From: Vitrella brassicaformis CCMP3155 | Lineage: Eukaryota; Protista; Chromerida | DNA length: 64,000 nucleotides | Direction of reading: 5' to 3' | Assembly: GCA_001179505.1 (NCBI GenBank) | Contig: CDMY01000227.1 | Location: 558,001 to 622,000, forward strand | Part shown: in pieces, positions 1-12,703 of the stretch | Position numbering within the stretch: the stretch's first letter is position 1 | How the letters are laid out: each line of letters begins with the position of its first letter | Position numbers and translations under genes: made by a program | The notes under the pieces: model-generated | What the model saw: the letters and a program-made list of their open reading frames with translations, nothing else | Databases searched by the model: none | What the model was told of the DNA's origin: nothing

Positions 1-310
1 CCAGCCACAGCACACACACCATGAACCATCATCACAACGCATTCAGATGCGAACGCATTCGTTCATGCATGTGGCCACCGGCTTTGTTGCTCACCATGGT
101 CGGATGCAGCTACACTCACGTGTGTCGGTGGTGCTCACACAGGCTCTCTACAGCGAAAGAAGGAAAAAGAGGCGATCTTGCAAGCTCAGCGAATACAACA
201 GCTCAGCCGACAAAGGGAGAAGGAGCAAATGAACGCGGCTCAGCTGCTCGTGTTGACGGCAGCTAGCAGCTGACGGCGAGATCTGGCAAGATCTGCCAGG
301 CGCCTGCAGG

Positions 311-967
311 ATGGTGTATCTTGAGGACTTCGATGAGTTCCAGAGCGCAGCGCAGGAGCTCTTCGCCAAGAACTCGGGACACAGACAGGTGAACGAACGC
401 ACTCACAGCGTCTGCCGCCAGACACAACTCTGTGCTGCCTGGCCTGGCTTGGCTTGGCTTGTTCAGGTACGTTATCAGGTCAAGTATCGCCACTGCGACG
501 GCAAGGTGGTCCTCAAGGTCACTGACGACCGAGTGGTCAGCCAGTGCCTGCCACGCACCAACCAAGGCAGTCAGCCAGCCAGCGGTCTCTCTGTGTGCGT
601 GGGGGTGACTGTGACTGTGACTGTGTGTGTTCCCCCAGTGTTTGAAGTACAAGACGGACCAGCTGACTGACATGCGGCGGATAGAGCGCCTCACTGTCCT
701 CTTCATGCGATGGACCACGTTCAAGGACGTACAGAAGGCCGACCAACTACCCACAGAGCTTGAAGGTACACAAACACACAAACACACACACAGAGGGACG
801 GACGGACGGACTGACACAACACAAGGACCACCAGGAGAGCCGCAGTCTGCCCAAATGTGTCTGTCCTGTGATTGTCATGTTGTCTGTCTGTGTCGCTTGC
901 AGAGTCAGGCGAGGCAGCGGCAGCCGCTGGCGGGAGGGCACAGAAGAAGAAGAAGCGGCGAGGCTGA
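311..967 (+). CDS. SRP9: Signal recognition particle 9 kDa subunit (4 exons: 311-388, 467-535, 639-765, 903-967)
   Basis: Spliced product MVYLEDFDEFQSAAQELF...RYQVKYRHCDGKVVLKVTDDRVCLKYKTDQLTDMRRIERL matches the SRP9 pattern (YRHCDGKLVLKLTDD, CLxYKTDQ). GT-AG introns keep the frame. Basic C-terminal tail QKKKKRRG. Confidence 0.88.
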
Positions 968-1545
968 CCTGACATGACCAGCCTGCAGCCAGGCTGGTGC
1001 CTGCCTGCCTGCCTGCCTCGACGTCGTTGCTTGGTTGGCTGATTGAGTTGTGTCCTTATCGACTGACTGGCTGAGCGTGCCGCCCAAAGCTGCACGTATG
1101 CCTCGCTTGCTTTTATGTAGAGTGCGGGCGCGAGGCGGGATGAATGGATATGGGTGGACACTGCCTGCCTGTGTGCATACAAACATGCAATTAGTTTCCT
1201 GCGTGTCAGCCAACGTTTTCTTCATAGGCTTAAGTTAACCGCACATAAATTGAGCATTGGTCCATCATATCCGTCCATCCATCCATCCACTCACTCAACC
1301 ATCGGCACCTCACCTAGCACGCCTCCCCTCCCGCCGCACCGCAGCGATTGACAGACAGATAAGTGCCTTTCCTCGGCCTGGCTGACAAATCAATCCCTCG
1401 CACATCGAAACCAGAGAGGGACCATCATGATCTCCTCTGAGATGGGCCGACGGCCTCCCTGCACCTAGCGTACCTGAAGGAGGGAGCATCAAACAGCACG
1501 AAAGAAACAGTAAGCATCACATCGCCCGCTGTCTGCCCATGCTAT

Positions 1546-2941
1546 CTATGTTCTCTTCTCTCCCTGGATGGACGAGCTGAGCTCACCATACCATGCTTTG
1601 AACTCCGCATTGCTGTCCTGCAGGACCTTCAGGGTGGTCATGTCACGCATGGCGCTCAGCTGCCCGTAGATGATCAGGTCGGCCATGTTGGGACTCTCAC
1701 CCCCCCTGCGTTGATTGATTGCGTCACCGCCATCCATCCAGCCATCCATCCGGCAATGTTCGTTTGTGTCGTGCGAGTGAGTGTACGGTACGCACCTGAA
1801 TTTGCCGCCCTTGTCGCTGACGCGCTTCATCCAGTCAGCGATGGCGTCGAGCAGCTCCTGCCTCTCGTCGGTGATGTTGTACTTCTTCTTGAGCTTGGGC
1901 GACACTGCAGTGCATCCATCCATCATTCACGCAGTCGCCAACAGACACAGACACAGACACACGATGCTGTGCGACCCTCCCTCCCTCCCTCCCTCCCTCT
2001 GTGTGGTTGGTGTGGTGTGTGCCGACTGACCGACCCACCGAGCCACATGAAGAGGGAGCCGGTGGTCCTGAGGACCAGCTTCTGCCATGCCGTCCAGGTG
2101 CTCGCACTCTTGGACATGTACTCGAAAGCCTCGTAACTGAAACACACCACACGCACACGTACCAGCCTGCCTGCCTGCCTTGCTGGTGGGTGGTGCCTTC
2201 TGATCTGTCGCAACCGTGCCGACCTCTCCGAGAGCGTCCTGTAGATGTTTGGTGGGAAGAGGATGACCAGCTTGTCGTAAGCCCAGTCGATGTCGGCCTT
2301 CTCCTCCTCGCTGCACTTGTCGAGGCTCTTGAGCGTGGGGGATGCCGAGCCCCTGAGGTCGGCCAGCCTGTCAATGATGTTCTTGCTGTCGTTGACTTGC
2401 TCGCTGTTGACCAGGGCGATGGGCACCTTTCGGTACTTCTTGTCGGGGCTCTGGTCGATCAAGGGGTGCTTCTTGATCTCATCCTTGGTCAGGGGGTTGA
2501 CCTGACAGACACACAGACAGACACAGATGGAGGAGCATCGATGTATGGCTGACGAAGGACTTGATGTGTACTGTACCTCGATGGCTGTGTAGGGCATCTT
2601 GTTGTGGTCGAGCAAAGCCTTTAATCCACAGCAATACGGACACACTGAAACACCGACCGCCACTCAACATACAACGGCATGCAGTGCAGTTCAGTGAGGA
2701 TCCTGTGTTGTGTTTGCTGACCTTCGTACTGGAAGATGGTCACATCCGGCATTCCGGCTGCCGCTGCCGATGACGAGAAGTGCCTGCATCTTGGCACATG
2801 AGAGGGCAGCCGCCTCATAGGTGATGATGCAGCGGGTGTCTGCAAGGCTGAGGTCCATCGCGCTGATGGCTGCAGCACCCCTGTAGCAGGCAACTCATGT
2901 GTCAAACGCGTCAGCGGAGCGATGAGTCTGCGGGCCGACAT
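1546..2941 (-). CDS. PTGES2: Prostaglandin E synthase 2-like glutaredoxin/GST-fold protein with N-terminal organellar-type presequence (multi-exon)
   Basis: IFQYEVCPYCCGLKALLDHNKMPYTAIEVNPLTKDEIK, YRKVPI, NDSKNII, FPPNIYRTLSE, KKKYNITDER and PNMADLIIYGQL follow the mPGES-2 family pattern. CPYC redox motif. Arg/Ser/Ala-rich N-terminus resembles a mitochondrial transit peptide. Confidence 0.85.
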
Positions 2942-3106
2942 CTTCGCTCAGATCCCCCTTGAGCAGCGGAAGAAAAGCGAAAATACAAGAGGGCAGGCAG
3001 ATCTGCACCACCACAAGAGCCTCGAGCGTCTGTTCCGAGGGAGAACCGTTCTGAAACTCTGCGAGCTTCGACTATTCGAGCTAAGCTTCGCGGAAAGGAA
3101 GTTGAG

Positions 3107-4015
3107 ATGAGTTTCTCTTCGTCTTATTCGTTTTCGTCATCGTCCGCGTGGCCGTGGAAGTCCATCGCGCAGTATGCAGGTCTGGCAGCAGCTGTGGGTC
3201 TGGTCTTCTACCTCACGTCGGAGCGACGGCCTCGGCGGCGCACCCTGAAGCGCGAGGAGCTGGTCAACATCCTGTTGGACCTGTCCAAGGACATGTATGT
3301 GGTCTTCACCGACCTGGCGCAGGTGTCGCAGAGCATCCACCGCCAGCTGGTGTCCAAGGGGCTTGACAAGCAGCTGGACAGCGAGCAGCTCGAGGGCATG
3401 CTGATGATGCAGGGCATGCAGCAGAAGTTCAAGGACACCCAGCTGGCCGTCTTCGACCGCCACAAGGTCAGCGAGGGCGACGTGGAAACCGCCACCAAGA
3501 AGCACGAGGACGACCCCGAGGTGCAGAAGTACGTCAAGGGCCTCAAGGTCATGTACAGCGAGGCCATCAAGGGAGACCTTCCGATGTTCCCCGGCCTCCA
3601 GCTGCCCGACACCCTCACCAAGGACAAGTACTTCGAGATCCTCGAGGACATCAACAACGAGAAGCTCAAGCGGTTCCGGCCCATCCTGAGCGAGATGAGG
3701 AGCGACAGCAGCAAGGCCACCAGCCCGGCGTCGCGGGAGGCCGGCGCCCTGCCGTCGAGCGAGCTGACGATGAAGCTCAAGGACGCCAGCGAGGCCGTCG
3801 AGGCCGAGATGATTGTCAAGCACGCGGCCGTCCTGGGCGAGAAGATGATGTTCGCGGCCGCCAATGCCGCCTTCTCCAAGGACGCCGACTTTCGCAAGCG
3901 GCGGTCGGATGTCGACGCTGCCCACCAGGAGCGCATTGTCAACCTTATGAAGACTATCAGTGCGGGGGGTGGTGGGGGCGGGACTGGCAGCAGCAGCAGT
4001 GCTGCCAAGGGATGA
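3107..4015 (+). CDS. Intronless 302-aa hypothetical protein with one N-terminal transmembrane anchor and a helical body
   Basis: Long ORF with strong GC3 codon bias. Hydrophobic stretch YAGLAAAVGLVFYL followed by basic RRPRRR. No microsatellites inside. No family recognised. Confidence 0.8.
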   Translation: MSFSSSYSFSSSSAWPWKSIAQYAGLAAAVGLVFYLTSERRPRRRTLKREELVNILLDLSKDMYVVFTDLAQVSQSIHRQLVSKGLDKQLDSEQLEGMLMMQGMQQKFKDTQLAVFDRHKVSEGDVETATKKHEDDPEVQKYVKGLKVMYSEAIKGDLPMFPGLQLPDTLTKDKYFEILEDINNEKLKRFRPILSEMRSDSSKATSPASREAGALPSSELTMKLKDASEAVEAEMIVKHAAVLGEKMMFAAANAAFSKDADFRKRRSDVDAAHQERIVNLMKTISAGGGGGGTGSSSSAAKG

Positions 4016-4533
4016 GGAATGGCTGGCTGCTGATGGGGGTGTCTGTCTGTCGAGCCAATCTATCGCTTTGCTGCGGCTGTGTGTGTGTGTGCACATTTCT
4101 CTCTCTTCTGTTCATACGTGCCCACAGGGGAGGGAGGAAGGGCTATGGGAGCTGTCGTTACGACCTTGTTTAAGCGAGCCTTGTTGTAGAGTTTCTACTG
4201 TGACGTACATGGATGGTATGTGAGTGCCTGGCCCGTCAGCGGGCCGGCGCGGGAGCCAACAATGATCATTCACTCATTCCCTGTTGCAGTCCTGCACTTG
4301 GATGCTTTACATCCACCCTCAGACAGTGACTTTCTCCCCACACATGACATGAGATGACATGACGTGATGTGTGTGTGGGTGAACGGCTGGGTGGGATGGG
4401 ACGGACCATTGCGTACACAGCACACGAACCATTCCCACCCCCCCGGTTTGTGTTCTGCAATCAAGAAGCTACGCACTGCACCGATACTTGCAATGCATCC
4501 ATCTGCACTACCTCAGCCGACCATCAGCCACCC

Positions 4534-7023
4534 TTAATTGAAGTTGAATCTGCTAGTGAATACGGGCTCTGCGTCGGGCCTAACTGGTGCCATGGCTTGC
4601 CCAATGGCGTCGGGCACCGACACCGACACCGCGCGCTCCCGCACCCACGAAGCTGATGAGCTCATCCAGCGAGCACAGAGACAGAGAGACAGACAGAGAC
4701 ATCGCGCATGTCATTGATTAGCCGGGCGGCTGCTGAAGTTTGTTTACCTACCTCTGTTGTGTTGGATGTGGTGGGTGAGGACGATGTTCTCGGGCAGCAC
4801 CTGCTTGTGCGCGATGCCGACCGAGTGCAGATGCGACAGGGCCATCCCAACCTGTGGGTGGGTGGGCCCGGGTGGGTGGGTGGTCACACACACACAGGCA
4901 TACAGGCAAACACGCAGCCGAGCATCACTCCTTCCTCCCCACCTGCACAACGATGTCCTTGACTATGTCCTCTGTGTACACGAAGATGCGATGCCGCCGC
5001 GGCTGCGAGAACCGAGCCGGACTGCATGGCAACCAACATCCCGCCATCCATCCATCCATCCATGCGCCCACCTGAGCATTGACGACACCATACTGGCCGA
5101 CGCCGCACTCAGCCGGGACCCCTCGGGCCGCACCGACACAGCCGGAGGAGTTGTGTCCACCGCCGTCCGCACGACACCACCACCAGCAGCAGGAGGGGCT
5201 GGGGGCGGGTGCAGGGGAGGGTCCGCTGCGGGTGGTCTGGGTGCCTGTAGGTTGTTGTCGTCCTCGATGTCGCGGCCCTCGCCCTGGCCGGTGCCGGTGT
5301 GGAGTTGGCGGATGGTGTATGAGGCGAGTTGCCGCTTGTACTTCATGGCCTGCCCGCCGGGGGAGAGCTCGGTGATGGCCGTAAGGCTGCGGGACGGCAC
5401 GTCGGCTATGATCTGTTTGGTACACACAAGTAGGGAGAGGGGAGGGGAGGCGGGTGTGTTCTTTGGTGGGTCGGGTCGCTTGCCTGTTTGACGTCAGTGA
5501 CGTGTGGGTGGTGGACCAGTGCATGGAGGGTCAGCGAACGCAACATCTGCAGCCACACACACACACACACATGCAATGCATCCCTCCCTCCATCCCTCCC
5601 TCCCCGGCCACCCACCGACCTGCATGAGTTTGGTCTCCGTCTCGCCACTCGCTAAGGCCGCCGCCTCGCGCCACAGACCCTCACACGCCACATACTGCGC
5701 ACAATAAGAAGGAAACAACACAAAGGGAAGACACACAAGGTCTTTCGCCATTGGATGTGCGTGTGGGGGGTGGTGGGATCAGTCCAATCTCTGACCCGTG
5801 CGGCCATCTGTCCTCCACCCTCGGTATCCTGCACGAGCAGCGTCTTGGAGCGCTTGGTGCGGCCCAGCTCACACACTACTCGATACTTGTCGTCCACCAC
5901 GCCCCCCACACCCACACCCACGCTACCACAGATGCTACGCTCGCCCTGGCCGTCCTCCCCCTCCCTCTCCCCCTCTTGCTGGTCTGGCCGGCCCTGCTCG
6001 TCGAGAGGCAGGCCCCAGTTGTTGGCCTGGGCGAGCCACTCGTCGAGCAGAGAGCCCGCAGACGGCGACTCGGTGAAGCTCTCGCCGTGCATGGCCTGCC
6101 AGATGGAGGCGATGCTGCTGCACACATCACACACGAATATGACACACACGTAGAGATGCATCTGTGGATCGATCTATACCGTCTTGCTGTGGCGGCGGGG
6201 CTATTCTCTTCCTCTACACTCATCATGGCGGCGTCATCCCCGCCGTACGCCGAAGAACCGACAACAGATCTGCACACATGGACAAGTGGACGGATGAAAG
6301 ATACAATAGAGAGGAAGCGGCATGTGTGTGTACGTGTGTCAGTTACTGCATTAGCGGCCGCAGGTGTGCCACCGCCGGGTGTGCGAAAACATCGGGCAGC
6401 GTCAGACGCTGCGAAGTGTCGGGGTGCAGCATGCCTCTGCACCAACCACACACAACACAGACGCAAACAGACCGCTTCATCCATCCATCCATCCATCCAT
6501 CCATGTGTGTGTGTGTGCTGTACTCGAGTAGGTTTCGCATGTCGGTTGAGATGGCCGGTTCGGGAGGGAGGGCGACCCGCAGGTCCCCTCGGTAGCACTG
6601 CAGCTCGTAATCAGACCTCGACAGCTCCCTGCAGTCCACCACCAACAGCCAAACCGAACCAAACCATCCATCCATCCATCCATCCATTTTTGTCCCCGGC
6701 TCACTGACATCCAGGGGATGCGTCCGTAGAGCAGCACGGCCGCCGTGACGCCCAGACCCCACACATCCCTCGCGCGCCCGTCGTGAGATCTGTCCTCCTC
6801 CCCATTGCCGACGAAACACTCTGGCGGGAGGAAGCACGGGTGGCGATACTGACCTGCAGCCGGTACAGTAGCATAGGTCAGATCAGATCAGATCATAGAT
6901 CAGATCCACACAACAGATGGTGGACGCACCTGTGCCGCGCACTTTGAAGTCGGATTCGTTGACGGGTTCCGCCGCGTCAAGCGTGTGAAGCTTCACGGGG
7001 CAACGAAAACCGGGCATCGCCAT
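4534..7023 (-). CDS. CAMKK-like pseudokinase with circularly permuted subdomain order (VII-XI, linker, I-VIb); about 10 exons
   Basis: Spliced order: MAMPGFRCPVKLHTLDAA (VII), FLPPEC (VIII), RDVWGLGVTAAVLLYGRIPW (IX), MLHPDTSQRLTLPDVFAHP (XI), then YRVVCELGRTKRSKTLLVQD (I), MAARYV (II), HHPHVTDVKQIIADVPSRSLTAITELSPGGQAMKY (IV-V), DIVVQVGMALSHLHSVGIAHKQVLPENIVL (VIa-b). In-frame TAG precedes the ATG at 7023. The last exon is uncertain. Confidence 0.75.
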
Positions 7024-7107
7024 TTTCTATATATCAAAGGATTCTTCTCAAAACCGTTTCACAACGGTCGTACAGGCATCGTGTACGATTCCAAGTGGCA
7101 GCGAACG

Positions 7108-7611
7108 ATGGTATTTGCCCTGTCGCTGGCCTCTTTTCTCCCGCGCGGCTGCTGCAGATGTGGCGCAAACCATCCATGAGCGTCGGGCTGCAGATGGCAG
7201 TGGCGGCCCTATCGATACCCTCAAGCAGGAGGTATACAGACGCGCAGCCAGCCAGACACACGGACACACGGACAGACAGACCGGCGTTCTGTGTGGCAGT
7301 TTAAGGAGTTCTTGACGGCTCTCAAGGTGAAGGGAGAATCCGAAGACACCGCTGGTACGCAACAGGTGCAATGCGTGTGTGCCCATCCATCCACATGCGT
7401 GTGAGTGCAGGCAAAGACAGGGAGCAAGGAGAGAAGGAGGACATCGACTCGGAGTCAGACGACCAAGCCACAGAAGAAGACACAGATGACGTTGAGGAGG
7501 ACCCATGGGAGGGTGGGTACCCCATTTCCTTTTTCAACAAGACGGAGGAAGAGCAGGAACAGATACTGCTGCAACAGGTAGGTACACACCCATCCACCCA
7601 CCCACGTGCAC

Positions 7612-7646
<35 letters not shown>

Positions 7647-9278
7647 TGGCCGTCCTCTACCAGGCTGACACGGACGAGCTGATGCTCACTGACGAGGAGA
7701 GGAAGGAGCTCGAGGAAGAGATTGCGGCCAACAGGAAGGCGCGCCAGAAAAAGTGGAAAAAGGGCAAGAAAAAGAAGAAGAACGAACCTCCTAACTTCAT
7801 CATCATGTTTTCCGACGACCAAAGATGGGATGCTGTCGGTACGGACACACACCTAACTATGTGGGTGGGTGGGTCGGTGGATGGATGGGTGGACGTGTGT
7901 GTGTCTGTGTGCAGGTCTGGTCCAGCAGCGGCTGTCTGATGAAGATCGTCTGTTTCCCTTCTTCATGAGCGAGACCCCCCAGATGGACCGCATGATCAAG
8001 TCAGGACGCATACACATACAGAGGCAGAGGATGTGTGTGTGTGCTGCAATCAATCAATGATTGCAGGGAAGGCGTGTTCTTTGAGAATACGTTCGTGACC
8101 GAACCGCTGTGCTCGCCGGCCAGGGCAGCCCTGATGAGCGGTCGGTGGGGCAGAGAGCACCGCACACACACAATCCTGTGCATACGTGTGTGTGTGTGTG
8201 TGTGTGTGCAGGCGAGTACGAGCATTTTCACGGTACGGATGCACAGAGAGAGAGAGAGAGAGAGGGNNNNNNNNNNNNNNNNNNNNNNNNNNNNNNNNNN
8301 NNNNNNNNNNNNNNNNNNNNNNNNNNNNNNNNNNNNNNNNNNNNNNNNNNNNNNNNNNNNNNNNNNNNNNNNNNNNNNNNNNNNNNNNNNNNNNNNNNNN
8401 NNNNNNNNNNNNNNNNNNNNNNNNNNNNNNNNNNNNNNNNNNNNNNNNNNNNNNNNNNNNNNNNNNNNNNNNNNNNNNNNNNNNNNNNNNNNNNNNNNNN
8501 NNNNNNNNNNNNNNNNNNNNNNNNNNNNNNNNNNNNNNNNNNNNNNNNNNNNNNNNNNNNNNNNNNCTGAGGGGTCGACCCACCATTCGTGCGTACGTAT
8601 ACATTGTGTGGTCACCCACCCATTCAGGTGTGTTGGACAATGTGCTCTCTAAGTATCCGGTGCCAGGGAAAGGCGACAACATCACGCGCAACAACGACAA
8701 CACCATAGGGGACATCCTCTCTCAACACGGATACAACACCGCATTCGTGGGCAAATGGTCCGGACGCCCGTTGGACGCCCGTGTGTGTGTGTGTGCGTGT
8801 GTGTGCGTGTGTCAAGGATGCACATCCGTGTTGTGTGTTTGTCTTTGCAGGCTGGGCTCCCCACAGCGAGAAAGGCCTGGGTTCGATTTCAGTGCGTCCT
8901 TTCTGGCCCAGGCAAGCGCATGTGGGTGGGTGGGTGGGTATCATGCACCTCATGTCATGTGCGTGTGTGTGTGTGTGGTCTATAAAGGGTTCGTATTACG
9001 ACGAGTATCAGTTCTACATCAACGAGGAGGAGCGGCCTGACGACAAGAGAAAGGGATGGATCGACGGTAGGCGCCTTCCTCCCCCCTCCGCCCTCCCCCA
9101 ACACACACGTCCATCCATCCATCCATCCATCTCTCTGTCTCTGTGTGTGTGTCTGTGTGTGTGTACAGATTGGTCGACGAGCTTCGCATTGCGGTTCCTG
9201 GAGAAGTACAGACACGAACCGTTCTTCCTCGTTGTCTCACTCAAGGTGACGCACGTGACGATAGGCACACACACATGT

Positions 9279-9309
<31 letters not shown>

Positions 9310-12300
9310 CATGCACCGACCCTCCCCTTTTTGAGTGGATGCCAGGCCCCACATGTGCCTTGGGAGCCCAACACGAAGACGGAGGGCATATACAACAACA
9401 CGGACTTCCCACCGATGCCTAACGAAAACACGACACCCAGATGGTGTGCACGCACGGCACCCACCCACCCACCCACTCATGTGTCATATCCACGTGTGTG
9501 TCGATGTGTGAATGTGTGTGGCCGGGGTGTGTGGGTTAGGTACAACGCTATCAACCACACTAACCGCGAAAAACGGAGGACGACAACATCGGCCGGGTGC
9601 TCAACAAGCTTGACGACCTCGGTGATGCGCACCCTTCCACCCACCCACCCACCCACCCACCCACACCCACGTATATGTGTGCATGCATTGTGGACACATC
9701 AATTAATGTATGCACGGCAGATTTGGCCGACAACACTGTGCTCATGTTTTTCTCCGACAACGGCTATTTCCTGAACTCCCACGGCCGGCTCGGCAAGCGG
9801 TCGCCTTACGAGGAGTCCATTCGGATACCGTTCATCGTCCGATACCCAGACATGATCGAACCCATACGTACGCACAAAATCGCACATGTACCACTCTCTG
9901 TCTCTCTCTCTGTGTGTGTGTGTGTGTGTGTGTGTGCAGCTGACACCGGCCGATTTGAGAAGGACCTAGTGCTCCATTTTGACATCACTGCAACAGTGCT
10001 CGATCTCGCCGGCATCGAGCAGCCACCCCATTACCAGGTCCGTCCGCCACTCACGCCCACACACTCCCAATTGTATGTGTGTGTTTCCATGGACATGCAC
10101 ACACAGGGGAAGAGCCTCCGACCATTATTCGAGAAGAGCCCGGAAGACCCCCCATTGCTCGACGACTGGCGAGAAGGCGTGCTGACCAACTTTCACAAGG
10201 ACCCCGCGCCGACTTGGCCGACATGGTTCTCGTGGCGCACGCAGACGCACAAGATCAACGAGTACTCGCGCTACAAGGACCGGAGGGAGGTGTTTGACCT
10301 TACGAAGGACAAGTATGAGATGACTAATTTGGCCAAGGACGACAGCGACGAGAGCCGGGAGCTGGTCGAGGAGTTGAGGGCTGCACTCAACACCAAGCTT
10401 TATGAGGCCGGGTGAGTGGGTGGGTGGGTGGGTGACATGCCACCACACACACACACACACACACGTGTCCCTCCCTCTCTCCCTCCCTCCCTCCCTGTCT
10501 GTGTGTTTGTCAGGGTGCCACACCGAATGCCATGATTCCGTGACACGCCCGTCAAGCGCCCCTACCCATTCGGGGCACGTAACCCACCCACACCCACACC
10601 CACACCTCTGTGTGCATCAATCAATCAATCATCAGGTGTCCCTATGGGTGTTTGACAACAAGTCCCCCCGTGACCTCCGCAAGAGCAACGACGGGCGGCT
10701 GGAGGGCGGCGCCACCATCACTACCACAGACAGGCGGGGCCCCAACGACGGCCATCTCGTCTTGGGGCAGGGCGGCGAGGGCTATATGGACGTGTCGCAC
10801 GAGTCGTTCGGCAAGGCGGTTGTCGACCGCAGTGTGTCGCTGTGGTTCAAGGCTGATGACCCGCTCATGAAGGACCCACAGACACTATACGCTGAAGGGT
10901 GGGTGGGTGCGTGAAAAGGCGCACACATATGGACGGACACGCAGAATGGGTGGGTGGATGTATGGGGTGTGTGTGTGTGTGCAGGGATGAGGAGGCCGGT
11001 GTATCAATGGCGATCAAGGGCGGCCTGCTGGAAGGCTACGTCGCATCAGAGGGCCGCAACGCCACCATCCGCGTCCACATGACGAGCACCGAATGGACTC
11101 ACGTGGCCGTGCGCTTCCTCGGCGGCAACGAAACCTTCTCCCTCTTCGTCAACGGCAAGCTCATCGCCACACAAGAAACTGAATTCGATGCCATCGCCGC
11201 GAAAGCCGAGAACGCGGCCATTGGTGCTTACCTCCCACCGTCATCCTCCGATAATGAGCCGTCATCCTTTTTCTCCGCCTCGGTCGACGACGTCCGTGTG
11301 TACGCCTTCGAGGAAACGATCCGTGACGACGTGCTGGCGTCGCAGGGGCGGCTGCTTGCCCAATGGTCGTTTGAGGACACTTCCAACGACACCAACGCAG
11401 AGACAAACGGCACTTTCAAGAGAGAGGGAGACGAAGAAACCGCTCATGATGACGAGCAGCAGCAAGAACAACAAGAGGCGTTGAGTGAGGACGCGGCCCA
11501 GGTTGGGAAGGCGCTTGTGCTGGACGGGGAGAGCACGTGGGTGGACATCAGTGGGGACCTCATCACGCGGCGGTTCTCGGCCCTGTCGCTGGCGTTCTGG
11601 ATGAAACCTGGAGGGGAAGATGGCTTCATTGCGAGGGTCTCAAAGTTGAATGAGAGCATGATGATTTTCGAGACAGCTATCATGCACGTGTTGTCTGTCT
11701 GTCTGTGTGTGTGTGTGTGTGTGTGCATGTGTGTGCAGGGCGGAGAATCTGCGGGTGTCTCTGTCGGTCTGGTGCCCATCGACAACACGCTCGACGCTGC
11801 CATTTCAAGCTCAGGTGGGTAATCTCCACCCACCCACCCACCCACTATCCATTGTGTGCAGACGACGACCGGCACATCCTCTCCGTCCCCTTCACCCTCT
11901 CCCTCTACCCCTACGAGCACATCCCCGCATGGACACACATCACCCTCATCTTCGACGGCACCAACAACGGCCTCTTGGCCATCTATATCAACGGCACACA
12001 GGCGGGCAGCGTCGAGACGGGTTTCCACATGATCCCCCACTCCGACGAGAGCAACAGCGCTATCGGCAGGGCGCATGACACCACGGCGTTCGGCCCTCTC
12101 TATGAACCGTACCAAGTGCGAATGGCGAGGGAAGAGCTAGAGAGGCTGGCACGGCTTGCTGACGAGGAAAGGAGGCGACTTGCGCATATCGCAATGGGTA
12201 CGCCACTCTGCCCCTCCCGACCTCCACACACACACACAGACACTTTCGTGTGTGTGTCCATCGATTCATGTGCAGTGCCCGAAGACAGGGAGCATGACAG

Positions 12301-12703
12301 AGGTCCGAGCCGTCCCAGCGGCGGCAAACACACACACGAGGCGCCAACAAGCGACAATGACACAATCGCGGTCAGCAGCACGTTGGTGGCGATTGAGGGT
12401 GAGGACGCCGAGGAGCCGTTGCCAGCTTGGGGATTCTACGAGGGACTGCTGGACGACGTGGCCGTGTGGGACATTGCTTTGTCCGCGGCGGCCGTGGCCG
12501 ACCTCTACGCTAACCCACTCATCCAAAAGTACGCCGGTCGGCCATGCCATTGACACACACACACACACACACACGGACACCCATACACACACGGGGGAAA
12601 TGTCCCTTTGTGTGTGTGTGCAGGTCTTGAGCAAGACACAGACACAGAACAGACCAAGACACACACGAACAACCACACCCACCCGTCTACGACAAATGAA
12701 TGA
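7108..12703 (+). CDS. Cys-type (formylglycine-dependent) sulfatase fused to C-terminal LamG/concanavalin-A-like domains; over 20 exons, 5' end unresolved
   Basis: PPNFIIMFSDDQRWD, FENTFVTEPLCSPARAALMSG (CxPxR, Cys codon 8110-8112), GYNTAFVGKW, PFFLVVSLKAPH, DNTVLMFFSDNGY, GKRSPYEESIRIPFIVRYP. Downstream LamG-type motifs include SVSLWFK, WTHVAVRF, LFVNGKL, SVDDVRVY and GLLDDVAVWDIALS. One 300-N gap lies inside. Confidence 0.88.
8267..8566. other. Assembly gap (300 N) inside the sulfatase gene, after an (AG)n tract
   Basis: Run of N. Confidence 0.99.

What the first reader, a model, noticed from the sequence alone, without database searches (positions are those of the whole stretch)
4534..7023. 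Naturally circularly permuted CAMKK-like pseudokinase (subdomains VII-XI precede I-VIb)
Seen: one continuous spliced frame begins at beta8 (VKLHTLDAA, DFG position) and runs through FLPPE, DVWGLG and subdomain XI. It then crosses an acidic linker and supplies the N-lobe, hinge, alphaE and catalytic loop, ending just after beta7 (PENIVL). The two halves are complementary, with the break at the beta7-beta8 hairpin and no subdomain duplicated or missing. An in-frame stop precedes the ATG, a divergent gene begins within about 100 bp, and only about 500 bp without kinase motifs separate the 3' end from the convergent neighbour, so there is no room for missing halves. Catalytic residues are degenerate: VAIK Lys to Arg, HRD to HKQ, DFG lost, Gly-loop lost. 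Established: the EIIDDP...EYxxGGxxMxW pattern is CAMKK-like, and tandem duplication followed by terminal trimming is the classic route to circular permutation. Inference: the halves assemble into one permuted pseudokinase fold acting as a scaffold.
Basis: partly seen in the sequence, partly recalled or inferred. Interest (0 to 1): 0.78.

Follow-up and report, generated by a model that had tools for sequence, protein, structure and literature searches.

The report
Kinase gene with swapped halves
A single-copy gene of the alga Vitrella brassicaformis encodes a catalytically dead protein-kinase-like protein in which the back half of the kinase domain comes before the front half; no natural case turned up in three literature searches, but whether the two halves fold together is untested.

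Summary
Window 7023..4534 (minus strand) is a 12-exon gene with consistent intron phases (ten GT-AG introns, one GC-AG). Its exon-by-exon reading equals the deposited Vitrella brassicaformis protein CEL95453.1 / A0A0G4EHJ5 (538 aa).

On that protein, Pfam Pkinase positions 161-261 match residues 35-133. Kinase positions 39-137 match residues 297-493. Alignments to solved ULK3, CaMKK1 and MAPKAPK2 structures show the same swap.

The catalytic residues are degenerate: VAIK Lys to Arg280, HRD to HKQ, no DFG in register, Gly-loop lost. Several structural core residues are kept.

Independent k-mer assemblies confirm that the subdomain-XI exon sits directly upstream of the N-lobe exons, with no missing half downstream. 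One spliced RNA contig confirms introns 8, 10 and 11, but it retains the 50-nt intron 9, which breaks the frame. No RNA was found for exons 1-7.

The gene is single copy and no relative was found in the searches run.

Three points are not shown:
- Residues 1-34 are assigned to beta8 and the activation loop by position only.
- The "CAMKK-like" label is really only "CAMK-group-like".
- Folding of the halves into one domain is untested: AlphaFold runs were uninformative, and the ESM Atlas model has pTM 0.65.

The scan holds no similar finding on other DNA.

The parts
6930..7023 (-). Exon 1: ATG at 7023 (deposited start 7017), residues 1-29 of P0001. Inferred beta8 (PVKLHTL), a DFG-position remnant (T12-L13-D14-A-A) and the start of the activation segment.
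   Evidence: In-frame TAG at 7029-7027. Exon maps to P0001 1-29. The beta8 assignment is by position only.
6709..6853 (-). Exon 2: P+1 loop/APE (CFLPPE, Glu41) and alphaF (DVWGLGV, Asp59). Subdomains VIII-IX.
   Evidence: Exon alone matches Pkinase 162-198, E 0.0016. It lies within the 35-133 match to model 161-261.
6524..6628 (-). Exon 3: subdomain X (alphaG region).
   Evidence: Within the Pkinase 161-261 match. Aligned to ULK3 and CaMKK1.
6347..6436 (-). Exon 4: subdomain XI (alphaH-alphaI, Arg123, HPAV), the end of the kinase domain.
   Evidence: It lies in the same Logan contigs as the N-lobe exons.
6180..6269 (-). Exon 5: 90-nt Gly/Ser/Ala-rich linker exon. Skipping it would keep the frame. 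It is the only exon without GC3 periodicity.
5796..6117 (-). Exon 6: linker (two predicted helices, then an acidic low-complexity stretch), followed by beta1-beta3. Gly-loop remnant LGRTKRS; MAAR with Arg280 in place of the VAIK Lys.
   Evidence: N-half HMM positions 2-79 match residues 252-343. Arg280 is in the AxK column. No homologue among 1.84 billion representatives.
5620..5694 (-). Exon 7: start of alphaC (Glu300 aligns with the alphaC Glu).
5484..5546 (-). Exon 8: end of alphaC and beta4 (HHPHVTDVKQ), followed by a GC-AG intron.
   Evidence: ULK3 alignment. The splice is confirmed in RNA contig L193.
5072..5412 (-). Exon 9: beta5, hinge and alphaD (ITELSPGGQAM), then a Pro/Ala/Gly-rich insert of about 95 residues.
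5022..5071 (-). Intron 9: 50 nt, contains a (GGAT)n repeat. It is retained in the only RNA contig, which shifts the frame to a stop after ...CTQRT.
4943..5021 (-). Exon 10: start of alphaE.
   Evidence: Joined to exon 11 in RNA contig L193.
4752..4851 (-). Exon 11: alphaE, catalytic loop (His481-Lys482-Gln483 for HRD, Asn488 kept) and beta7 (IVL).
   Evidence: Exon alone matches Pkinase 109-134. N-half HMM positions 93-130 match residues 455-492. MAPKAPK2 alignment.
4534..4652 (-). Exon 12: 38-residue tail with no family match, plus the TAA stop (4536-4534).
   Evidence: Joined to exon 11 in RNA contig L193.

Best explanation
This is a real, single-copy, transcribed gene of Vitrella brassicaformis. 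One reading frame encodes a protein-kinase-like domain in circularly permuted order, laid out as follows:
- Residues about 6-135 carry (inferred) beta8 and the activation segment, then the APE motif and helices alphaF to alphaI.
- A linker of about 115 residues follows, partly helical and partly acidic.
- Residues about 251-492 carry beta1-beta5, the hinge, alphaD, a roughly 95-residue insert, alphaE, the catalytic loop and beta7.
- A 46-residue tail ends the protein.

The new chain ends fall at the beta7/beta8 hairpin.

The catalytic Lys, the catalytic-base Asp, the DFG motif and the Gly-loop are gone, so the protein cannot be a conventional phosphotransferase.

Inference: the N-terminal helical half packs against the C-terminal half to rebuild one kinase-like body. 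The linker would span the old C- and N-termini. The protein would then act non-catalytically, as a binding or scaffolding pseudokinase.

Inference: it arose from two adjacent kinase copies that fused and lost their outer halves, long enough ago that no trace of those halves remains.
For: SHOWN.
- The swapped order of significant kinase matches on one deposited protein.
- That protein equals the exon-by-exon reading, with 11 phase-consistent introns.
- There is no gap (N) in window positions 1-8266.
- Logan contigs from two runs are 100% identical to window 6505..1976 and 6505..5218. They carry the subdomain-XI exon, the linker, the N-lobe exons, the stop and the next gene.
- RNA contig L193 has introns 8 (GC-AG), 10 and 11 removed exactly as in the model.
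- GC3 is 0.77 against GC2 0.49 in both halves and the linker; introns are 0.54.
- The gene is single copy with no close paralogue.

INFERRED.
- The sequence is about 25% or less identical to any other kinase, yet it keeps 540 open codons and all splice sites. That argues for selection on the protein.
- Core residues that link the two halves in canonical kinases are kept: His481 of HRD and Asp59 of alphaF; Glu41 and Arg123 (the APE-Arg pair); Ala278/279 in beta3; I-V-L in beta7.
- The ESM Atlas model of this exact sequence has pTM 0.65.
Against: - There is no direct evidence that the halves pack together. AlphaFold2 gave pLDDT 34.5 without an alignment. With an N-half alignment it left residues 1-100 at pLDDT 27-44, with pTM 0.38. 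Foldseek on that model found nothing significant.
- The only RNA contig retains intron 9, which would truncate the protein before alphaE and the catalytic loop.
- No RNA was found for exons 1-7, so the junction between the halves is not confirmed in RNA.
- No orthologue or same-order relative was found, so conservation cannot be measured.
- Beta8 in exon 1 is not supported by sequence statistics.
- No remnant of the supposed lost halves was found.
Confidence: 0.5

Rival explanations
1. It is an evolutionary leftover. Two neighbouring kinase copies fused and lost parts, and the result is still transcribed and annotated but makes no stably folded kinase-like domain. Transcripts are frame-broken or degraded, and the gene is an orphan on its way out.
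For: - All catalytic motifs are degenerate.
- The gene is an orphan with no detectable relative.
- The only RNA contig retains intron 9 and ends in a premature stop.
- Structure prediction gives no confident whole.
- Exon 5 lacks a coding signature.
Against: - 540 codons are open and 11 introns are intact, despite divergence to about 25% identity or less from any kinase. That is very unlikely without selection.
- GC3 periodicity is strong in 11 of 12 exons.
- Fold-core residues are kept while catalytic ones are lost, which is the usual pattern of working pseudokinases.
- Intron retention in one short-read contig does not give the splicing ratio.
Confidence: 0.27
2. The protein is made, but the halves do not close on themselves. 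The N-terminal C-lobe piece of one molecule pairs with the C-terminal piece of another (head-to-tail dimers or chains). Alternatively, each piece works as a separate binding module, as the C-lobe-derived KIND domain does.
For: The long linker and the chain ends at the beta7/beta8 hairpin allow either intra- or intermolecular pairing. Standalone C-lobe modules are known from established knowledge of the KIND domain. AlphaFold2 did not dock the halves within one chain.
Against: The N-terminal piece lacks alphaD, alphaE and the catalytic loop, which belong to a self-standing C-lobe. Pfam's KIND family does not match (one search lists only two kinase families at E up to 10). The failure to dock reflects a missing alignment for that half, not a negative result.
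Confidence: 0.12
3. There are two separate products: a short protein from exons 1-4 (retaining intron 4 gives a stop directly after ...RPLMQ), and a second protein that starts at an internal Met in exon 6.
For: The donor of intron 4 reads cag|gtaa, so retaining the intron ends the frame right after subdomain XI. Exon 5 has weak coding signal. There is no RNA across exons 4-6.
Against: - Only 230 nt lie between exon 4 and exon 6, which is too little for a 3' end plus a promoter.
- The splice sites are canonical and phases match with or without exon 5.
- The deposited model joins them.
Confidence: 0.07
4. It is an assembly error that swapped two segments of an ordinary kinase gene.
For: (GGAT)n repeats in introns 2, 3 and 9 break k-mer assemblies; the Logan contigs stop at 6505. 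A scaffold gap lies at 8267-8566.
Against: - The junction that matters (subdomain XI exon, then linker, then N-lobe, then stop, then next gene) lies inside repeat-free contigs from two runs.
- The breakpoints needed for a swap do not coincide with the repeats.
- Exon 1 has its own ATG behind a stop and exon 12 has its own stop.
- Spliced RNA agrees with the 3' half.
Confidence: 0.03

Closest known systems
Eukaryotic protein kinase domain (Pfam PF00069), CAMK-group kinases such as ULK3, CaMKK1/2 and MAPKAPK2
   Same: Significant sequence matches to subdomains VIII-XI and to I-VIb (weakest over beta1-beta3). The same core residues are present: HRD His, catalytic-loop Asn, alphaF Asp, APE Glu and its Arg partner.
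   Different: The order of the two halves is swapped. The Lys, catalytic Asp, DFG and Gly-loop are lost. There is a linker of about 115 residues between the old ends and an insert of about 95 residues between alphaD and alphaE.
Pseudokinases (e.g. Tribbles, CASK, VRK3, ROP5)
   Same: A kinase-like sequence in which catalytic motifs have degenerated while fold-core residues are retained. Tribbles 1/2 and CASK are among the PDB matches.
   Different: All described pseudokinases known to me keep the normal N-lobe-then-C-lobe order.
Natural circular permutations by duplication and trimming (e.g. circularly permuted GTPases of the YlqF/YjeQ type, saposin/swaposin)
   Same: The same set of structural segments appears in cyclically shifted order within one chain. 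Origin from tandem copies is plausible.
   Different: Those cases have many homologues and solved structures. Here there is one gene in one genome, no structure and no remnant of the duplication. Three literature searches found no such case for the protein-kinase fold.
KIND domain (kinase non-catalytic C-lobe domain)
   Same: A kinase C-lobe-derived piece used without catalysis.
   Different: KIND is a complete C-lobe standing alone. Here the C-lobe is split, and its first part (alphaD, alphaE, catalytic loop) sits after the N-lobe at the other end of the chain. There is no Pfam KIND match.

Membership tests
Protein kinase superfamily (Pfam Pkinase PF00069) | Whole-protein score above the curated cut-off | tested here: met
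   72.2 bits against 31.7. PK_Tyr_Ser-Thr scores 26.1 against 23.1.
Protein kinase superfamily (Pfam Pkinase PF00069) | Domain segments colinear with the model (N-lobe before C-lobe) | tested here: not met
   Model positions 161-261 match residues 35-133. Positions 39-137 match residues 297-493.
Active protein kinase | VAIK Lys, HRD catalytic Asp, DFG Asp in register, Gly-rich loop | tested here: not met
   Arg280; His481-Lys482-Gln483; Thr12 at the DFG-Asp register, with Asp14 two residues later; LGRTKRS for GxGxxG.
Pseudokinase | Kinase-like sequence lacking at least one of the three catalytic motifs | tested here: met
Pseudokinase | Adopts the kinase fold | tested here: inconclusive
   AlphaFold2 gave pLDDT 34.5 and 52.9. 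Foldseek found nothing significant. The ESM Atlas model has pTM 0.65 but is not inspectable.
Circularly permuted protein | Same segments in cyclically shifted order, none duplicated or missing | tested here: met
   VIII-XI then I-VIb are demonstrated. Subdomain VII is inferred by position only. No second copy of any segment was found.
Circularly permuted protein | One polypeptide from one transcript | tested here: inconclusive
   Phases are consistent and the deposited model is identical. RNA exists for exons 8-12 only, with intron 9 retained.
Circularly permuted protein | Same three-dimensional fold as the unpermuted family | not testable with these tools
   The alignment tool cannot hold rows for both halves in permuted order, so no adequate alignment could be given to AlphaFold2.
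CaMKK family | Closest to CaMKK rather than to other kinases | tested here: inconclusive
   PDB ranking: ULK3 4.7e-12, CaMKK1 1.4e-10, MAPKAPK2 3e-9, CaMKK2 5e-9, BRSK2, Tribbles.
CaMKK family | Arg/Pro-rich insert after beta2-beta3 and a C-terminal calmodulin-binding autoinhibitory segment (from established knowledge) | not tested
   No such insert is evident in residues 264-280 by eye. No dedicated test was run.
KIND domain | Match to the Pfam KIND family | tested here: not met
   Only Pkinase and PK_Tyr_Ser-Thr are listed at E up to 10.

The most novel reading that the evidence does not exclude
This is the first natural circular permutation of the eukaryotic protein-kinase fold. It would be a working pseudokinase whose chain starts at beta8 and ends after beta7. 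The old termini would be joined by a long linker, which would show that the fold tolerates being re-threaded at the beta7/beta8 hairpin.
Probability: 0.45. Interest if true: 0.8.

Novelty: new variant of a known kind. Interest (0 to 1): 0.6.

Why it matters
The protein-kinase fold is among the most studied folds. Its two lobes and the spines that link them are always described in one chain order.

A natural protein that keeps the parts but re-threads the chain would be informative in three ways:
- It would show where the fold can be opened.
- It would give a natural template for engineered split or permuted kinases and sensors.
- It would add a new route by which pseudokinases arise.

It would also warn that domain-order-blind annotation ("protein kinase domain-containing protein") can hide such rearrangements.

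If it is instead a decaying fusion, it is only a curiosity of one algal genome.

Tried and rejected
HOMOLOGUE SEARCHES (all blank beyond self).
- Exon 6 against 1.84 billion representatives. The only other hit, P0002, is an unrelated Glu-rich repeat protein.
- Full-length P0001, the exon-6 ORF (candidates of 95-303 aa) and residues 1-140 against the 5.8-billion set.
- JGI metagenomes.
- Own genome.
- Limits: the length window means shorter or longer relatives of the C-half, and any relatives of the N-half alone, were not covered.

TRACES OF THE LOST HALVES.
- tblastn of P0001 on the whole window gave noise only.
- Exon 1 against exon 12 peptides share AEPVNESDF/AEPVFTSRF, but p = 0.07 by shuffling and other exon pairs score higher.
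- DNA flanks against exons were at shuffle level.

ALPHAFOLD2 WITH BOTH HALVES COVERED.
- I cut 75 viral and about 60 Vitrella kinase genes into N- and C-half references.
- MAFFT always overlaid the two sets, both in the sandbox and in the tool.
- N-only rows also needed trimming. The tool put Gly-loops and beta3 onto the linker exon 5, which HMMER does not support.

OTHER IDEAS.
- Trans-splicing to restore the normal order: exon 11's donor joined to an AG just before exon 1 is out of frame and hits a stop. Exon 11 to exon 2 is in frame but would skip beta8. Rejected as unnecessary.
- RNA look-ups for the 5' half by unspliced ORFs were blank.
- Bacterial promoter and terminator scans are irrelevant to a eukaryotic gene.
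Full report
WHAT THE SEQUENCE IS. The window is contig C227:558001-622000 of a 72.7-Mb, 1064-contig assembly. The protein encoded at the finding is deposited as CEL95453.1 / UniProt A0A0G4EHJ5, "Protein kinase domain-containing protein", from Vitrella brassicaformis CCMP3155. Nothing here is human.

HOW THE PROTEIN WAS HANDLED. All exon work was done by reference. All full-length work used the database entry P0001, which a search with exon 6 returned.

GENE MODEL.
- Reading the minus strand gives 12 exons from ATG 7023 to TAA 4536-4534.
- The exons sum to 1623 nt, which is 541 codons including the stop.
- Every junction keeps the frame. Ten introns are GT-AG and intron 8 is GC-AG.
- Each exon's translation is found in order in P0001 at residues 1-29, 31-77, 79-112, 114-142, 144-172, 174-280, 281-305, 306-326, 327-439, 441-466, 467-499 and 501-538. 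The skipped residues are the split codons.
- P0001 starts at the second Met (7017). A TAG lies one codon upstream of the first ATG.
- Codon-position GC is 0.68/0.49/0.77 for the exons, against 0.54 for the introns. It is alike in the C-half, the linker and the N-half. Only the 90-nt exon 5 lacks the signal.

THE SWAPPED ORDER IS REAL.
- On P0001, Pkinase scores 72.2 bits (cut-off 31.7), with residues 35-133 on model positions 161-261.
- PK_Tyr_Ser-Thr scores 26.1 bits (cut-off 23.1), with residues 297-493 on positions 39-137.
- Even single exons give the swap: exon 2 matches model 162-198 and exon 11 matches model 109-134.
- Against solved structures, ULK3 (E 4.7e-12) aligns chain residues 55-100, 107-145 and 186-269 to query residues 303-350, 454-492 and 50-135. 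CaMKK1 aligns 191-288 to 33-135. MAPKAPK2 aligns 110-150 to 453-493 and 177-313 to 35-168.
- I cut 97 N-half and 98 C-half pieces out of Vitrella and giant-virus kinase genes and built one HMM for each half. The N-half HMM hits residues 252-343 (beta1 to hinge) and 455-492 (alphaE to beta7). The C-half HMM hits residues 37-130.
- MAFFT with only N-half rows, or only C-half rows, places them in the same way.

RESIDUE MAP (P0001 numbering).
- Residues 6-16, PVKLHTLDAA: inferred beta8 and DFG position.
- Glu41: APE motif.
- Asp59-Val-Trp: alphaF.
- Arg123 and HPAV 132-135: subdomain XI.
- 136-250: linker. Both AlphaFold runs predict two helices at 167-183 and 191-206, followed by an acidic low-complexity stretch.
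- Gly258: sole survivor of the Gly-loop.
- Arg280: replaces the VAIK Lys, exactly 22 residues after Gly258, as in PKA.
- Glu300: aligns with the alphaC Glu in the multiple alignments. A pairwise ULK3 alignment instead puts Ser309 there.
- HHPHV 317-321: beta4.
- ITEL 339-342: hinge.
- About 356-450: Pro/Ala/Gly-rich insert.
- 455-476: alphaE.
- His481-Lys482-Gln483: replaces HRD.
- Leu485: replaces the catalytic-loop Lys.
- Asn488: kept.
- IVL 489-491: beta7.
- 492-538: tail.
These assignments rest.

The protein therefore fits the sequence definition of a pseudokinase. The residues that tie the two halves together in ordinary kinases are retained: the HRD His with the alphaF Asp, the APE Glu with its Arg, and the hydrophobic beta3 Ala and beta7 residues. 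That reading rests on established knowledge of the kinase spines, not on a test here.

1. Beta8/DFG in exon 1 is not supported by statistics. Exon 1 alone hits nothing in PDB. The C-half HMM alignment starts at residue 37. A beta8 profile ranks CPVKLH 7th of 533 positions. The assignment rests on position, on length (27 residues from Asp14 to Glu41, against 24 in PKA), and on two PDB alignments that reach back to residues 6-7.
2. "CAMKK-like" is not specific. ULK3 scores higher, and MAPKAPK2, BRSK2 and Tribbles are close behind. "CAMK-group-like" is the defensible label.

NO ROOM FOR MISSING HALVES.
- On the plus strand, a sulfatase/N-sulphoglucosamine-sulphohydrolase gene runs away from the kinase gene. 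SGSH_C (4.5e-19) and Sulfatase (7e-11) match at 9597-10412. Acidic and sulfatase-like exons appear from about 7150. A candidate signal-peptide-like start ATG lies at 7108, 85 bp from the kinase ATG; that start is my inference.
- Downstream, a 302-aa plus-strand ORF ends at 4015.
- tblastn of P0001 on the whole window, and DNA comparisons of the flanks with the exons, show no decayed kinase pieces.

IS THE ASSEMBLY RIGHT?
- There is no N in window positions 1-8266. The nearest scaffold gap is 8267-8566.
- Looking up the unspliced exon-6 ORF found two Logan contigs from runs ERR558151 and ERR558149. They are 100% identical to window 6505..1976 and 6505..5218. Two more, from ERR558200 and ERR558149, cover 1990-5876 and 2034-5212.
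- These contigs carry, in one piece, the subdomain-XI exon 4, exon 5, the N-lobe exons, the stop and the next gene. The key adjacency (end of the kinase domain directly upstream of its beginning, with no C-half after beta7) therefore does not depend on the reference assembler.
- The contigs stop at 6505, inside a (GGAT)n repeat of intron 3. Similar repeats sit in introns 2 and 9. These explain k-mer breaks, but they do not coincide with the breakpoints a swap would need.

RNA.
- The neighbour's ORF led to contig L193 from run SRR646408. It aligns to window 3106-4654, 4752-4854, 4936-5419 and 5484-5546.
- Introns 11, 10 and the GC-AG intron 8 are thus removed exactly as in the model. Translation of the contig reads ...HPHVTDVKQIIADVP......DIVVQVGMALSHLH... 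and ...IQHNRASWVRER....
- The 50-nt intron 9 (5071..5022) is retained, which shifts the frame to a stop after ...CTQRT.
- The best-conserved kinase motif of the N-half (alphaE and the catalytic loop) lies downstream, in the frame that requires removal of exactly this intron. No other acceptor keeps the frame. I therefore take retention to be an isoform or an assembly choice rather than the rule, but the ratio is unknown.
- The contig ends at the 5' edge of exon 8. Six further look-ups for the 5' half and one for the spliced 70-aa product found nothing new.
- A transcript joining the two halves is therefore likely, because only 230 nt separate exons 4 and 6, the phases match with or without exon 5, and the deposited model joins them. 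It has not been shown.

RELATIVES.
- No relative was found in the searches run. Exon 6 against 1.84 billion representatives found only itself and an unrelated Glu-rich repeat protein.
- Three word-indexed searches (full length; exon-6 ORF for fragments of 95-303 aa; residues 1-140) found only P0001. A metagenome scan found nothing.
- The own genome has a single copy and no near paralogue. The best other hit to exon 2 has E 0.007, and tblastn against 30 strong Vitrella kinases found only one marginal hit.
- These blanks do not cover short or very long relatives or the N-half alone.
- The consequence is mixed. Conservation cannot be measured. However, such deep divergence together with an intact 540-codon frame and 11 intact introns is hard to explain without selection on the product.

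FOLD.
- AlphaFold2 on the single sequence failed (pLDDT 34.5, pTM 0.21).
- To give it an alignment I prepared N-half and C-half rows by reference. MAFFT overlays the two sets whatever the mix.
- I therefore used an N-half-only alignment, trimmed after the tool misplaced Gly-loops and beta3 onto exon 5.
- The result was pLDDT 52.9 and pTM 0.38. Aligned N-half parts reached 70-92, residues 1-100 stayed at 27-44, and residues 101-140 reached 57-66.
- Foldseek on that model lists almost only kinases, but none below E 0.04.
- This neither supports nor refutes packing.
- The ESM Atlas holds this exact sequence with pTM 0.65 and mean pLDDT 0.60. Its order-dependent structure hits are kinases covering one half at a time. 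That is a hint of a compact whole, no more.

LITERATURE. Three full-text searches for circular permutation together with kinase-fold terms found no natural permuted protein kinase. The accession numbers occur in no held paper. From my own knowledge I know of none either. The scan's notes hold no similar finding elsewhere.

VERDICT.
- The gene-level circular permutation of a dead kinase-like domain is real (about 0.9).
- That it yields one polypeptide carrying both halves is probable (about 0.75).
- That the halves rebuild one kinase-like body with a non-catalytic role is the best reading but remains an inference (about 0.5).
- The main rival is a transcribed evolutionary leftover.
- It is a new variant of a known kind, of real interest to kinase structural biology if a structure or a full-length transcript confirms it.

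Noticed in passing
window 6660-6700, 6470-6510, 5040-5065, 7375-7395: Short (GGAT)n / TGGATGG repeats recur in introns 2, 3 and 9 and in the neighbouring gene. Logan k-mer contigs from two runs end exactly at the intron 3 repeat (6505).
   Followed up: partly
window 3106-4654 (locus L193 1-1549): One RNA contig (SRR646408) runs without a break from the convergent 302-aa ORF (3107-4015, plus strand) across the 520-bp spacer into exon 12 of the kinase gene. The 3' ends of the two convergent transcripts therefore overlap or abut.
   Followed up: partly
window 3107-4015 (+): Single-exon 302-aa ORF with very high GC3 (0.88) and no Pfam family (weak HSR, E 0.11). It is present in RNA contig L193.
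   Followed up: no
window 7108-10412 (+), gap 8267-8566: Divergent sulfatase / N-sulphoglucosamine-sulphohydrolase gene. Its candidate start (MVFALSLASFL...) lies only 85 bp from the kinase ATG, which suggests a very short shared promoter region. A 300-N scaffold gap interrupts the gene.
   Followed up: partly
window 10899-12550 (+): Two ORFs with Laminin_G_3 (concanavalin-A-like lectin) matches, E 1e-11 and 1.5e-10.
   Followed up: no
window 6180-6269 (-), P0001 144-172: Linker exon 5 reads SVVGSSAYGG..., which resembles a kinase Gly-loop. MAFFT repeatedly aligned canonical Gly-loops and beta3 strands to it, but HMMER places beta1-beta3 at 252-281. It could be chance in a Gly/Ser-rich exon or a relic of an older N-lobe start.
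   Followed up: partly
window 6345-6348 (-): The donor of intron 4 reads cag|gtaa. Retaining this intron would end the frame directly after subdomain XI and give a 143-residue protein with the C-half only.
   Followed up: no
P0002 (database protein, 2451 aa): The only other hit of exon 6 is a repeat protein with about 16 copies of a unit ending in a SUN-domain-like motif. The match is driven by Glu-rich composition (no BLAST hit).
   Followed up: yes
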